Positions 40,589 to 45,000 of a DNA stretch of 64,000 nt are shown here, piece after piece (position 1 is the first letter of the stretch; each line of letters begins with the position of its first letter). This stretch comes from Sphaerodactylus townsendi. Taxonomy: Eukaryota. The notes under the pieces are model-generated. The model saw only the letters and a list, made by a program, of their open reading frames with translations, did no database searches and was not told the DNA's origin. The translations under genes were made by a program, and so were the position numbers. Location of the stretch: contig NC_059425.1 of assembly GCF_021028975.2 (NCBI RefSeq), positions 124,868,001 to 124,932,000 on the forward strand, read 5' to 3'.

Positions 40589-40788
40589 TTGGTGTACAAA
40601 CACATCAACCGGTGCTTCCAAGGGGCTTCCCTCCCGGTTGATCATGGAAATAAATCCGAATCCCATTCGCACATTGAACCATTTGCAATGGCCCGTTCCG
40701 TGCAAGACCTGGGATTCCTCCTCCTCTTCCTCTTCCTCCTCTTGTTCCGGCAATTTCCCGGGTTCATCTCCACCTTTACTCGCCCCCG
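40589..40788 (-). CDS. LIN28B: LIN28B coding exon 2 (N-terminus and first half of cold-shock domain)
   Basis: Acceptor ttgccaaaccag| and donor CACCAA|GTAAGC bound 200 nt encoding (A)GASKGGDEPGKLPEQE9SQVLHGTGHCKWFNVRMGFGFISMINREGSPLEAPVDVFVHQ. This includes RNP1-like GFGF and RNP2-like VFVH motifs. The MINREGSPL and GDEPGKLP segments are B-paralogue-like rather than LIN28A-like. Confidence 0.98.
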
Positions 40789-41795
40789 CTGGTTTGGCAA
40801 AAGGAGGGCGGAAAACAAACACACAACAAAGGCAAAGAGTTAAATTCGAGAACCATCCCCTTGGCGCTTATCCAAGAGCGATTGCTTCAGAGGGCAGCAA
40901 ACACATGCCCGCCCGGAGGAACATTAGGAAATCCTCTCTCTCTCTCTCTCTGCGGGCAGCAACACCCACCCCAACGTCATACATTACGGTGTTTAGGGTC
41001 TTAAGGGAAAGCTTCCAAGCATCAGCAGGAAGGCGGCATCTGCTAAAATTTACTCTGCTTGGATTCTCCTTTTTTGCACAATACACGCGCGCAACCCCCC
41101 CCTCCCCCCGGAGCAGGCTGACCCCCTCTGCCCCGTACAGGCTCTGCCCTTTCATGCTATCTCTCACCACCACCACCACCTCCCGCAACCTCCCCAGAAA
41201 GCTATACTTTACTTGGATACTGCTGGTTGAGCACCGATCCCATCCCTGCCCAGAGGAATTCGCAGGCGACTGAGCCTCGGCCGGCCGGGCGAGGAAGCAG
41301 GAGGAGGAGGCGGCGAGGAGGAGGAGGAGAAGGAGGGGGGCGACCTAGCCGAGCGGAGAGGCGATTGCACAACTTGGAACGGCCCATCCAGCAGCCGGAG
41401 CCGCAAGCGCCGTGTGCTGGGGGGCCGAGGCGCTCATCCTCCTCGCGCTCGTCGCCCCCGGAGCCCGCACTCCGACATCCCTTCCAAGTCGGAGGAGGAG
41501 GGGGCAGGTGTCCGAGGCTTTCGTTGCCCCCCCTCTTTCTCCCCTTTCCCTCGGCCGCTGCTTGCTCAATCGCGCACGAACAATCGGCACAAAAGCCCCC
41601 TCGGCCAGCTTTGCAAGTTGGGTGAATCGGAGTGGGCGGTGCGCGGCGCTGGGGAGAGCCCGGCTCCAAGGGGGCTGCCTGTTCCCTCCCTCCCCTCTCT
41701 GTTAAAGGGGCTCTTGAAAAGGGGGAGGGTCGACGGAGCCGAAACAAAACCGCAGGGGGGAAATGCAACCCGGGCGGGGAGGGGGAAGAATTAAC

Positions 41796-41805
41796 CTTCG
41801 GCCAT
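41796..41805 (-). CDS. LIN28B: LIN28B coding exon 1 (ATG GCC GAA G, phase-1 donor)
   Basis: The minus strand reads GGGGCAAC ATG GCC GAA G|GTTAAT: good Kozak context and a GT donor at 41795-41794. It joins exon 2 in frame to give MAEAGASKGG, matching the LIN28B N-terminus. Confidence 0.93.
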
Positions 41806-42030
41806 GTTGCCCCGCGGGCCCTCCACTCCGAAGCGGCGACGCGGACGGTCAACCCCGGCTGGCTCTCAGCAGCCTCGGGCGTCAGCCGAACATCTTGATC
41901 GGACGCGGCCCCCCCTGTGGCTCGCATGGTCCAGCGCGCCCTCCTGCCAGTCTCTCTCCTCTCCCCCCCCCCCACGCGGCTCCCGCACCACTCCGGGAGC
42001 CCCGCGGGCACGTGACGCGCTCAATTACAA
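41806..42030 (-). promoter_or_regulatory. LIN28B 5' UTR with two upstream ATGs (41927, 41893) and an E-box near the TSS
   Basis: Minus strand: AATTGAGCGCGTCACGTG...GGACCATGCGAGC...ATCAAGATGTTCGGCTGA...GAGGGCCCGCGGGGCAACATG. The blocks resemble the human LIN28B 5' UTR as I recall it. Confidence 0.75.
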
Positions 42031-45000
42031 GCCTCCTGGCGACTAATTTTGCCCCGGCTCCTGCGAGGGGGTTTGGCAAGAGGTGGGAGCGACCAATCGC
42101 CGCCGCCGACAGCGGGCGGGACGCGCCGCGATAATTTATGAATGAATCACCGGATTGCCAGGGGCGCGTGTGCGTCTCTCTCACTCTCTCGGCGCCGGGC
42201 AGGAGGGGGACGCGCTGGGGCGGCCAGGAGCGGCGGCAGGTTTCCCGCGCGGGTCTTCCGGCGCCCCTCCTCGCCGGCCCGAAGGCGGCCGGCCTTTTGC
42301 CACCGCTGACCCACCGCGCTGGCGTGAAAGGAGCTCGGCTCCTCCACTCACGCCAGCTACACACCGGGGTGGCCAGCACCGAAAGCAGGCGTCGGTTTTT
42401 TCGACACGACTTCCTTCCCGAAAGACTGAACGTGGACATCCGTAGCCTACGAGAGTGGGGGTGCGACGGGCTGCCACCCTCCGCTATTCACGGGCCGATC
42501 CTAGGCGCGGCTCCTCGGGAGAAAACCGGGGTTCGGTCCAGCTGGTTTCCGCCCACGTGCGCACAGGATTGTAACCCTTCATACAAGTGTCACCGAACAG
42601 AAGAGGTCATTGGACTGCTAAGTAAGGTGTCATGAGGAGTGAGGAACAGAAATCTGACAATTTCATCTTCAAGACCTTGGCCAGATATTAGGCACGATCC
42701 TAGTCATGTTGTATACTAGTCATGTTCCTCCCCGGGCGAAGAATGCACGAGTAGGTTACAACTTAACCGCACCTTCCAACCCCCCCCCCCCCTCACTCCA
42801 ACTAGACGAGCTTGAGGTCCGACGGACATGCTCCTGCAATTACAGCCGCTGTGCATTGTGCATACGTGTGTATCCATATTGTAGGGCCGGGAGGTGTGAG
42901 ATGAGACTCCATAATAGTAGTAATTTGTGGCGGTTGTTACTGGAGCACCTCCCGGTAGCGCAGCCGCACCTGACTGTGATTCCGGCGGCCCAACGTTTGC
43001 GTGCATCGGGAGAAGAGACCCGGGAGGGAGGGAGGGAGGGAGGGAGGGGCCAGCCGGGCCAAGGATCGCGCTCCACAGGGCCCTCCGCCATCTCGTTCCG
43101 GGGGAGAGGATATGATTAATGACTTCCTACCTAAGGGGCCAGATTGCAAGGCGAGCATGATTGCGAACATCCACCAGCAACGATTGTTCGCCAGGAGCAG
43201 GAGAGAGTTAGGTGGAAAATACGAGAAAGGGAACCGGAGACTTTGGCCGGGAGCAGGAAGCCCAGCGGGTGGCGGCGCACAGGGAGCACGCGGGGGAAAG
43301 GGCAACAAAGAGGAGAGGCGTAAAGCCAGCCCTGGAGCCTGCGGTTCAAATCGACAGCGGGGAAGGGGCAGAGATCTCGGCCCCAGTAGCCGGAGGCTTT
43401 GGGCTGTGCACAGCGGCTGAAAAGGCAGAGCAGGAATTGCCGGTCACTAAAAGAAGACCCAGGCCCCCACTCCTCTTCTTAGTCTCAAGAATGGCACCTA
43501 TATTTCACATAAAAGTGTGAGCAGCAAGAAAGGCCACAAGGTCGGATGGAGATCGTTCGTTATGAAAGAAGAGAAGGAGCCTCCTGCAACAGTCCACCGT
43601 TGTGCTGACTACATACTACGTCAGTATGAACCTCGCCTGCAGAATTTAAGCCTATTTATTGTTTTCCGTAGAGTTTACAGCGCCCCCACTTCCGCCCAAT
43701 TTCAGCCACTTGACCTGACGCTTAGTGCTCAGCCCACATCCCGGCAGTTTTGAAGGCTGGGGCTTGACAGGGACCCTCTTAATGCAAGTTCCGCTTTCCT
43801 CTTCTGCTCCCAGCCCAGTTTGCCCTGAATATGCTTTTAGGAAATCGCTGGCTGTTGGTTTTAGAACTGGCGACAGACAGTCTGAACAAACAGCCAAGGT
43901 CTCGGACCGGTTGAAGGGGCCTATTTACTCCCTTTTGAGGGGTGAGTGGGGGAGTGTCGCTTATTTTGATTGTATTACTTTCTAGGACACCAAGGTTTAA
44001 CATTCGATCCGCAGGGGCAATCACGAATAATCCTCTCCCATCCTTCCGCAAGCACATACCAACTAGTAGACCTAAATCATGAAATTCCTATGCAGTCTTC
44101 ATCTGTAAACATTTGAGGAGTCTTGCTTCCGCCCCTCCTCTGGCTCGCTTTCCTCCTTACAAATATACGGCTGCCCTAAACAGCGGGCAGTAAAAGCCTC
44201 CCTGCCATTCTATGCAAACTTAGCGGGAAGTAAGCGCCATTGGATGCACGGGAGCTTACTTATGAGTACTATGTACCAGACTGACCTGAACATTCAACTA
44301 AAACGTAACGGAAATGTAGCCTGAACCAATGCCTGTTAAATACGAAGTACTAAGGTTTTGTCTCCAAGTTAAGCCAGAAAGGATTGCAGTCTATATAAGT
44401 GTCAATTTCTACTGCAAAACATTCTTTTAAAGGAAGAAACGTGTAGGGAAGAGGCAAAGTATTACTGCTGCCAATTTAATATGATTAATATGTTGTTGTT
44501 TTTCAGATACCCATTGACATGACCATTTCACAGATCAGAGATGTAACACACAAACAGATCGGATTTCCATAGTAACGCTGGGGTTCTAGGAAGAAAAGGA
44601 CAGGTTAGCTCCCTCTGCCAAATATAATTTCTTCCATCCTTAGATTAAAGATTGCATGAAAGACATAGCTGTTTGATAAAAGAAATACCCCAACATTTTC
44701 AGTCTTTGAAATGGACTGTTGTGCATTCTTTGGTACAATAAAGATAGAAGACCCAGGGACATAAACCCTTCTTTGAGAGCCTTGATTTGGTAAGTGGCTA
44801 GTTTTCACACACACAACTTTCAAGGCAAAAGGGCGGGGGGGGGGGGGGGGGATAGGACTCTCCCTGCCCAAGACCATTGTGGGTTTTTTTAAATTTTTCC
44901 ATGAAATTTTTGTAATTCTGACTTCATTCAGTGGGGCCAACGGTGAAGTGCCGAACTAGGTACCGCAGGATTCCCCCTCTCTACTTTAAAAAGACCAGGA

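What the first reader, a model, noticed from the sequence alone, without database searches (positions are those of the whole stretch)
40642..41927. Overlapping upstream ORF: a hidden 92-aa basic microprotein spliced across LIN28B exons 1-2
Seen in sequence: an upstream ATG at 41927 (GGACC ATG C, A at -3) opens a stop-free frame of 44 codons in exon 1. It passes the LIN28B start out of frame (122 nt upstream) and reaches the normal donor in phase 0. It continues 48 codons into exon 2 and stops at TGA 40644-40642. Product: MRATGGAASDQDVRLTPEAAESQPGLTVRVAASEWRARGATWPK|RGRVKVEMNPGNCRNKRRKRKRRRNPRSCTERAIANGSMCEWDSDLFP, with an NLS/NoLS-like KRRKRKRRR. From memory (unverified), the human 5' UTR has the same uATG in the same relative frame (MRAKF...QDVRL...RARGATWPK), although the middle has diverged. 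Inference: this is a conserved translational brake on LIN28B, because ribosomes starting here cannot make the full-length protein. They could reinitiate at the exon 3 Met (6506) to give a cold-shock-truncated short isoform, or trigger NMD, since the stop is about 53 nt from the next junction and further junctions follow. It may also be a dual-coding microprotein.
Basis: partly seen in the sequence, partly recalled or inferred. Interest (0 to 1): 0.85.

Follow-up and report, generated by a model that had tools for sequence, protein, structure and literature searches.

The report
Gecko copy of LIN28B's PLUM uORF
The 92-codon upstream reading frame across LIN28B exons 1-2 is real and conserved from frog to sheep, but it is the gecko counterpart of the already published "PLUM" overlapping uORF of mouse Lin28b, so it is a correct rediscovery, not something new.

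Summary
On the minus strand an ATG at 41927 opens 44 stop-free codons. They pass the LIN28B start (41805) out of frame, reach the exon-1 donor in phase 0, run 48 codons into exon 2 and stop at TGA 40644-40642.

In this GC-rich gecko sequence alone, such an ORF is not unlikely (about 0.42 x 0.19 by shuffling). Comparison with other species settles it. The same uATG (A at -3, C at +4), frame and openness are present in sheep, pigeon, turtle, frog, an anguid lizard and another gecko (78-92 aa). Both snakes examined have lost it.

The idea is already published. Mouse Lin28b has a translated uORF called "highly conserved in vertebrates" (PMC4712605, 2016). It encodes the 85-aa microprotein PLUM, which overlaps exons 1-2 out of frame (PMC12657964, 2025).

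The "NLS-like" KRRKRKRRR is only the +1 reading of LIN28B's poly-Glu tract. The first half of the peptide evolves almost neutrally in squamates. PLUM's known partner L1TD1 exists only in eutherians. In the gecko a cis-acting translational brake is therefore the likeliest role.

No RNA data exist for this species, so the TSS and translation remain untested. The scan had not noted this element before on other DNA.

The parts
41925..41927 (-). uATG of the overlapping uORF (context tggaccATGc: A at -3, C at +4)
   Evidence: The same motif and context occur in sheep, pigeon, turtle, frog, Elgaria and Gekko kuhli.
41796..41927 (-). Exon-1 segment of the uoORF: 44 codons, reaching the donor in phase 0
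   Evidence: translation; 0 stops in this frame against 2 and 1 in the other two frames.
41803..41805 (-). LIN28B main start codon (exon 1a; strong context gcaacATGg), 122 nt downstream of the uATG in a different frame
40789..41795 (-). Intron 1 (GT at 41795, acceptor cag at 40791-40789). It also holds alternative first exon 1b.
40642..40788 (-). Exon-2 segment of the uoORF: 48 codons plus TGA, in the +1 frame of the LIN28B CDS
   Evidence: 51% identical to the sheep counterpart.
40642..40644 (-). uoORF stop TGA. It overlaps the LIN28B Met codon ATG 40645-40643 (AUGA) and lies 53 nt before the exon 2/3 junction.
   Evidence: The stop is at the same site in sheep, turtle, frog, Elgaria and Gekko kuhli.
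40717..40743 (-). KRRKRKRRR run of the uoORF, which is the +1 reading of the GAG/GAA poly-Glu tract of LIN28B
   Evidence: Read directly from the sequence.
40589..40788 (-). LIN28B exon 2 (200 nt), encoding GASKGG...VDVFVHQ
   Evidence: Identical to Sphaerodactylus townsendi XP_048349753.1.
41882..41893 (-). 3-codon mini-uORF (ATG TTC GGC TGA) nested in another frame
   Evidence: Kept in 8 of 9 species, snakes included.
42009..42014 (-). Conserved E-box CACGTG of the proximal promoter, 82 nt upstream of the uATG
   Evidence: aligned in all nine species.
42093..42097 (-). Conserved ATTGG (inverted CCAAT box) of the proximal promoter

Best explanation
This is the gecko orthologue of the overlapping upstream ORF (uoORF) of LIN28B. 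In mouse that ORF is translated into the 85-aa microprotein PLUM. The window matches Sphaerodactylus townsendi or a close congener.

Proposed mechanism:
- On transcripts that start at the proximal promoter (exon 1a), scanning ribosomes first meet the uATG at 41927. Its context is good but not optimal (A at -3, C at +4).
- Ribosomes that start there elongate straight across the LIN28B AUG, 122 nt downstream and in another frame. They cross the exon 1-2 junction in phase 0 and terminate in exon 2, so they cannot make LIN28B.
- Ribosomes that leak past the uATG use the strong main AUG.
- The uoORF therefore sets the share of ribosomes that make LIN28B from this transcript class, and it yields a 92-aa arginine/lysine-rich peptide as a by-product.

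What is shown: the sequence anatomy; conservation of start, frame and openness in seven non-snake tetrapods; and loss in snakes.

What is inferred: that the gecko TSS lies upstream of the uATG, that the uATG is used, and that the main selected role in squamates is in cis and not through the peptide.
For: Anatomy.

Orthology and conservation:
- The uATG sits in the same motif (gacc/gact ATG cgagc), 110-122 nt upstream of the main ATG, and reaches the donor in phase 0.
- The predicted products are 87 aa in sheep, 78 in pigeon, 86 in turtle, 85 in frog, 91 in Elgaria, 92 in Gekko kuhli and 92 in the window.
- The stop is at the same LIN28B 'SM[I/T/S]' site in six of the seven.

Frame signature:
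- There are 0 stops in the uoORF frame in all seven species, against 1-3 in each other frame.
- Shuffles of the AT-richer sequences stay open in only 7-12% of trials.
- All three indel events in ORF-keeping lineages are multiples of 3: +3 in squamates, -9 in Gekko, -9 in frog.
- The window gecko is only 52% identical to turtle over the uORF part, yet it keeps the ORF.

Snakes: they lost the uATG, and their frame then acquired 1-2 stops and non-triplet indels. This is what is expected if the ORF itself is the selected unit elsewhere.

Literature:
- PMC12657964 describes an ATG-initiated Lin28b uORF with a 'partial Kozak' that begins in the 5'UTR and overlaps exons 1 and 2 of the main ORF out of frame. 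It is 85 aa, is seen by Ribo-seq, immunoblot and LC-MS, and is 'highly conserved among mammals'. [quoted passage not shown]
- PMC4712605 reports translated Lin28b uORFs 'highly conserved in vertebrates'.

Cis over trans in squamates:
- pN/pS of the non-overlapping half is 0.56-1.04 among squamates.
- The second half is dictated by the LIN28B frame.
- L1TD1, the only known PLUM partner, arose in the eutherian ancestor (PMC4161310).
Against: - No expression evidence exists for this species. Whether the TSS lies upstream of 41927 rests only on conserved promoter boxes, ATTGG at 42097 and the E-box at 42014.
- In the gecko alone the open frame is not improbable.
- The whole promoter and 5'UTR is ultraconserved at DNA level in sheep, pigeon and turtle: 86-93% upstream of the uATG, 91-96% within the uORF part, and pS only 0.05-0.16. 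It stays conserved in snakes that lack the ORF. Much of the conservation is therefore not due to the ORF.
- In mouse, frameshifting the uORF left the Lin28b protein level unchanged. The published phenotype is attributed to the peptide, so a trans role in the gecko cannot be excluded.
- I could not see the published PLUM sequence, which is given only in a figure. I fetched no rodent locus. Identity with PLUM rests on gene, architecture and length.
Confidence: 0.8

Rival explanations
1. The ORF is incidental. The proximal promoter and 5'UTR of LIN28B form an ultraconserved DNA/RNA element (transcription-factor sites, an RNA structure or protein-binding sites). The open frame survives only because the nucleotides hardly change.
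For: - Sheep versus turtle, pS is 0.10 over about 320 My, and substitutions are not concentrated at third positions ([2,1,2]).
- The stretch upstream of the uATG, which cannot be coding, is 86-93% identical among sheep, pigeon and turtle.
- Snakes lost the ORF but keep the homologous stretch 67-77% identical to turtle and Elgaria. That is more than the ORF-keeping window gecko retains (52-58%).
Against: - The geckos and Elgaria changed 25-48% of positions and had indels, yet they kept the uATG, its context, the frame and zero stops.
- After the uATG was lost in snakes, the frame quickly filled with stops and frameshifts.
- Translation and a knockout phenotype are shown in mouse (PMC12657964).
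Confidence: 0.12
2. The 92-aa product is itself the selected function in the gecko: a PLUM-like trans-acting microprotein, possibly nuclear or nucleolar because of its KRRKRKRRR run.
For: - Mouse PLUM is a stable, detectable protein with knockout phenotypes independent of the Lin28b level.
- Short motifs persist from sheep to gecko: MRA, QDVRL, RARGATWPK and ...CEWD....
- The turtle-Elgaria pN/pS is 0.27.
Against: - The basic run is the +1 reading of the poly-Glu codons. It shrinks to 'SRQRT' in sheep, where LIN28B has EQAEDE.
- Mouse PLUM is cytoplasmic.
- Within squamates, pN/pS of the free half is about 0.6-1.0.
- QDVRL overlaps the conserved mini-uORF ATG, and RARGATWPK overlaps the main-AUG context, so their conservation has other explanations.
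- L1TD1 is eutherian-only.
- There is no Pfam domain.
Confidence: 0.25
3. Chance ORF in a GC-rich 5'UTR with no function, or not even in the mRNA because the TSS lies downstream.
For: - Shuffles give 0.42 for 44 open codons and 0.19 for at least 48 codons in exon 2.
- There is no RNA evidence.
Against: - The ORF is conserved in seven tetrapod lineages, with a fixed start context and phase.
- The promoter boxes lie upstream of the uATG.
- The mammalian orthologue is translated.
Confidence: 0.05

Closest known systems
PLUM, the Lin28b uORF-encoded microprotein of mouse (Hao et al., Nat Commun 2025, PMC12657964)
   Same: - Same gene.
- AUG start in the 5'UTR with a partial Kozak context.
- Out-of-frame overlap with exons 1 and 2 of the main ORF.
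- Similar length: 85 aa in mouse; 85-87 aa predicted here for frog, turtle and sheep; 92 aa in the gecko.
   Different: - The gecko's exon-1 half is only about one third identical to the sheep version.
- It carries a long Arg/Lys run that comes from a longer poly-Glu tract.
- PLUM's partner L1TD1 does not exist outside eutherians, so the published mechanism (L1td1 condensates) cannot apply as such.
- No expression data exist for the gecko.
Translated Lin28b uORFs in mouse ES cells (Popa et al., BMC Genomics 2016, PMC4712605)
   Same: Ribosome footprints show uORF translation in the Lin28b 5'UTR. The authors called the uORFs highly conserved in vertebrates, based on the multiz 60-way alignment, and proposed that they lower protein output.
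   Different: That paper does not describe the peptide, squamate sequences or the loss in snakes.
Classical out-of-frame overlapping uORFs that act as translational brakes by capturing scanning ribosomes (leaky-scanning control; established knowledge, not tested here)
   Same: A suboptimal uAUG lies upstream of a strong main AUG. The uORF ends downstream of the main start, so reinitiation at the main AUG is impossible.
   Different: This uoORF is unusually long, spans a splice junction in phase 0, and has a protein product proven in a mammal.

Membership tests
LIN28B overlapping uORF / PLUM | AUG start inside the 5'UTR of the LIN28B exon-1a transcript, upstream of the main AUG | tested here: inconclusive
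   The ATG lies 122 nt upstream of the main ATG and downstream of the conserved ATTGG and E-box.
LIN28B overlapping uORF / PLUM | Out-of-frame overlap with the main ORF across exons 1 and 2 | tested here: met
   Searches show phase 0 at the donor and the +1 frame in exon 2. The paper states an overlap with exons 1 and 2.
LIN28B overlapping uORF / PLUM | Product of about 85 aa | tested here: met
   92 aa in the window, and 78-92 aa in the six other species that keep it. Mouse PLUM is 85 aa.
LIN28B overlapping uORF / PLUM | Positional orthology and sequence similarity to the mammalian uORF | tested here: met
   Compared with the sheep locus L006, the start motif and distance are the same. The exon-2 piece is 51% identical (E 1e-14) and the exon-1 piece 13/26 identical. 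The published mouse sequence itself was not available as text.
LIN28B overlapping uORF / PLUM | Translated (ribosome footprints, peptide detected) | not testable with these tools
   No Ribo-seq, RNA-seq or MS data are available for this species.
LIN28B overlapping uORF / PLUM | Acts through binding L1TD1 | not testable with these tools
   L1TD1 arose in the eutherian ancestor (PMC4161310). From the literature, a gecko should therefore lack the partner. I did not search the gecko genome for it.

The most novel reading that the evidence does not exclude
The LIN28B uoORF is ancestrally a cis-acting brake, and its peptide was free to drift. It predates PLUM's eutherian-only partner L1TD1 by more than 200 My. 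In squamates it keeps its start, frame and openness while its free half evolves almost neutrally. It was discarded outright in the snake ancestor. On this reading, the PLUM-L1TD1 protein function is a late eutherian add-on to an old regulatory ORF, and snakes are a natural knockout for testing what the brake does.
Probability: 0.4. Interest if true: 0.45.

Novelty: already known. Interest (0 to 1): 0.25.

Why it matters
LIN28B is a master regulator of let-7, developmental timing and stemness, so any element that sets its protein output matters. The element itself is already published: it is translated in mouse ES cells (2016) and encodes the PLUM microprotein, which has knockout phenotypes (2025). 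This finding therefore adds no new kind of thing.

- The ORF is present, with fixed start context and phase, from frog to sheep.
- It survives heavy GC-biased sequence turnover in geckos.
- It is lost in two snakes.
- In squamates its peptide half outside the LIN28B overlap drifts almost neutrally.
- It is older than PLUM's only known partner.

Together these points argue that the conserved function is translational control in cis. They also caution against reading the basic run as a localisation signal.

Tried and rejected
**Searches and look-ups that gave nothing**
- RNA evidence: the look-up of sequencing runs (kind rna) returned four holders from one study, none on record as RNA.
- A search for annotated PLUM-like proteins used the uORF-frame exon-2 piece, lengthened upstream by 17 stop-free intron codons only so that the tool's length window would include 85-92-aa proteins. 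It found no candidate.
- A Pfam scan of both peptide pieces found nothing.
- Four look-ups found no gene on record: rat P0156, Latimeria P0194, Tiliqua P0318 and Podarcis P0322. As a result, no rodent, fish, skink or lacertid locus was compared.
- No supplement of the PLUM paper is held as text.

- After, no letters of 41787-41823, nor their translation, were sent to any search tool. The exon-1 piece was cut at 41826, and the multi-species alignment stopped 19 nt before the main ATG. Local scripts read the window, and one of them printed the window's full exon-1 peptide.
- The joined exon 1 + exon 2 product was never assembled or sent to a tool. The pieces were handled apart, which is possible because the junction is in phase 0. 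For that reason no structure prediction of the whole peptide was made.
- Human sequence was not fetched or compared.

**Ideas rejected**
- The NLS/NoLS reading of KRRKRKRRR: it is a by-product of the poly-Glu tract.
- Termination-reinitiation at the overlapping AUGA or at the exon-3 Met: it is possible on paper, but reinitiation after a 92-codon ORF is generally inefficient (established knowledge) and nothing here supports it.

Full report
**1. The observation**

On the minus strand, ATG 41927-41925 (context tggaccATGc) opens 44 codons with no stop up to the last base of LIN28B exon 1 (41796; donor GT at 41795). The product of this piece is MRATGG...RARGATWPK.

The annotated-type LIN28B start (gcaacATGg, 41805) lies 122 nt downstream in another frame. 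Exon 1 contributes only ATGGCCGAAG to the main ORF.

Exon 2 is 40788-40589. In the LIN28B frame it reads GASKGGDEPGKLPEQEEEEEEEEESQVLHGTGHCKWFNV...VHQ. In the uORF frame it gives 48 codons and then TGA 40644-40642, 53 nt before the exon 2/3 junction.

The nearest in-frame stop upstream of the uATG is TGA 42023.

**2. Is it more than chance?**

Not from this sequence alone. The exon-1 piece is 71% G+C, and 42% of mononucleotide shuffles keep 44 codons open. Codon shuffles of exon 2 give a run of at least 48 codons in the +1 frame 19% of the time.

The basic run KRRKRKRRR is the +1 reading of the GAG/GAA codons of the poly-Glu tract.

**3. What organism is this?**

The exon 2 and exon 3 peptides are identical to Sphaerodactylus townsendi LIN28B (XP_048349753.1, P0330). 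They differ from the five other squamate LIN28B proteins compared. The window is therefore from that gecko or a close congener.

**4. Expression evidence**

None could be obtained. The run search found four holders from one study, none on record as RNA.

Pieces were cut at 41826, and alignments stopped 19 nt before the main ATG. The joined exon 1 + exon 2 product was never built. The junction is in phase 0, so the pieces could be treated apart.

**5. Comparison with other species**

I started from the exon-2 LIN28B peptide and a full-length relative. With these I fetched the LIN28B 5' region of eight species:

| Locus | Species | Group |
|---|---|---|
| L001 | Chelonia mydas | turtle |
| L002 | Gekko kuhli | gecko |
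| L003 | Nanorana parkeri | frog |
| L004 | Pituophis catenifer | snake |
| L005 | Columba livia | pigeon |
| L006 | Ovis aries | sheep |
| L007 | Elgaria multicarinata | anguid lizard |
| L008 | Candoia aspera | snake |

In all seven non-snake species, window included:
- an ATG sits in the same motif (gacc/gact ATG cgagc; A at -3, C at +4), 110-122 nt before the main ATG;
- the frame is open to the donor in phase 0;
- the frame continues into exon 2.

| Species | Predicted product (aa) |
|---|---|
| sheep | 87 |
| pigeon | 78 |
| turtle | 86 |
| frog | 85 |
| Elgaria | 91 |
| Gekko kuhli | 92 |
| window | 92 |

The stop falls on the same LIN28B 'SM[I/T/S]' codons (ccATGA) in six of the seven, always 53 nt from the junction.

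The uoORF frame has 0 stops in all seven species, against 1-3 in each other frame. For the AT-richer sequences, only 7-12% of shuffles stay open. The three indel events in ORF-keeping lineages are +3, -9 and -9.

**6. Loss in snakes**

In Candoia and Pituophis the uATG motif reads gggccGAGccagcc and ggaccTAGacagcc respectively. The frame that reaches the donor in phase 0 now holds one or two stops, with no ATG after them, and the indels include +5 and -2. Pituophis, Candoia and the lacertid proteins also have SML instead of SMI at the stop site.

So the ORF decays once its start is gone. This argues that it is a selected unit elsewhere.

**7. What is being conserved?**

Two layers can be separated.

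(a) The whole proximal promoter and 5'UTR is an ultraconserved block.
- Sheep, pigeon and turtle are 86-93% identical upstream of the uATG and 91-96% within the uORF part.
- pS is only 0.05-0.16, and substitutions are not biased to third positions.
- The block includes ATTGG (42097-42093), 'gtaattga' and the E-box CACGTG (42014-42009).
- Snakes keep 67-77% identity in the former uORF stretch.

Much of the conservation is therefore at nucleotide level and does not speak for coding.

(b) In squamates the sequence has turned over (window versus turtle 52%, window versus Elgaria 58%), yet start, context, frame and openness persist. Meanwhile pN/pS of the non-overlapping half is 0.56-1.04.

The constraint visible in the gecko lineage is therefore on the existence of the ORF, not on the first half of its peptide. 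The second half is dictated by the LIN28B frame (51% identity to sheep).

**8. Literature**

The element is already described.
- Popa et al. 2016 (PMC4712605) showed DMDA-PatA-sensitive footprints on uORFs of mouse Lin28b. They called the uORFs highly conserved in vertebrates (multiz 60-way) and suggested that they lower protein output.
- Hao et al. 2025 (PMC12657964) showed that an ATG-initiated Lin28b uORF with a partial Kozak context begins in the 5'UTR and overlaps exons 1 and 2 of the main ORF in another frame. It encodes the 85-aa cytoplasmic microprotein PLUM. PLUM was detected by Flag fusions, antibody and LC-MS, and is 'highly conserved among mammals'. Frameshift knockout leaves the Lin28b level unchanged but alters pluripotency and implantation through L1td1.
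- A 2026 preprint already cites it as a textbook uORF protein.

Gene, architecture and length all match, so I regard the window's ORF as the gecko orthologue. I could not read the PLUM sequence itself, because it appears only in a figure and no supplements are held.

**9. Mechanism in the gecko**

Shown:
- a suboptimal uAUG upstream of a strong main AUG;
- an out-of-frame overlap that rules out reinitiation at the main AUG;
- deep conservation of exactly these features.

Inferred: leaky-scanning control, in which the uAUG diverts a fixed share of ribosomes from LIN28B on exon-1a transcripts.

A trans role for the peptide is possible but less likely here, for three reasons:
- the drift of its free half;
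- the artefactual origin of its basic run;
- the fact that L1TD1 arose only in the eutherian ancestor (PMC4161310).

A weak-context AUG at 40605 intervenes. Reinitiation after long ORFs is generally poor (established knowledge).

**10. Scope**

LIN28B in the window has three alternative coding first exons:

| Exon | ATG | N-terminus |
|---|---|---|
| 1c | 49381 | MRSFWKVSSSP |
| 1a | 41805 | MAE |
| 1b | 41243 | MGSVLNQQYP |

All three match NCBI isoforms of squamates. Only exon-1a transcripts can carry the uoORF, so it can regulate one transcript class only.

**11. Verdict**

The core interpretation is right but already published. The NLS, reinitiation and NMD embellishments are unsupported. 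Novelty: already known. The small new points are persistence through squamate sequence turnover, loss in snakes, and the fact that the ORF is older than L1TD1.

Noticed in passing
window 41212-41387 (minus strand), inside intron 1: Alternative coding first exon 1b: ATG 41243, MGSVLNQQYP, donor GT at 41212, phase 1 like exon 1a. Its N-terminus resembles that of LIN28A. An in-frame upstream ATG at 41387 would add 48 residues (MGRSKLCNRL...). The same exon is present in turtle, sheep (degenerate), Gekko, Elgaria and snakes. It is annotated in Pituophis, Varanus, Candoia, Latimeria and Callorhinchus isoforms, and the long form in Eublepharis and Liasis.
   Followed up: partly
window 49381 (minus strand): Alternative coding first exon 1c (ATG AGA TCA TTC TGG..., MRSFWKVSSSP, donor G|gt). 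It matches S. townsendi isoform X2 and most amniote 'isoform X1' proteins. I did not examine what lies there.
   Followed up: partly
window 41882-41893 (minus strand): A 3-codon mini-uORF (ATG TTC GGC TGA) nested in another frame within the uoORF. Its ATG, inside 'caaGATGtt', is kept in sheep, pigeon, turtle, frog, Elgaria and both snakes, and is lost only in Gekko kuhli. In snakes it is the only uATG retained from the ancestral 5'UTR.
   Followed up: partly
L004:3786-4010 and L008:3240-3429: Both snakes lack the ancestral uATG. They share a new upstream ATG (cagagcATGg) whose ORF ends within exon 1. In Candoia it stops 6 nt before the main ATG, in the main frame.
   Followed up: partly
window 41950-42160 (minus strand); L001, L005, L006 homologous stretches: The LIN28B proximal promoter and 5'UTR is an ultraconserved block: 86-96% identity among sheep, pigeon and turtle. 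It holds ATTGG, 'catgtaattga', the E-box CACGTG and 'ttcattcataaattat'. The geckos have replaced much of it with GC-rich sequence.
   Followed up: partly
window 40642-40645 (minus strand): The uoORF stop overlaps an in-frame LIN28B Met codon (AUGA), which is a stop-start arrangement. It is probably just a consequence of the conserved 'SMI' codons and was not tested.
   Followed up: no
P0005 (JGI metagenome contig, 3685 bp) and P0013: These are LIN28B-like proteins in which the exon 2 and exon 3 sequences are joined, with many substitutions. They look like processed pseudogenes or cDNA-derived fragments in non-vertebrate-labelled data.
   Followed up: no
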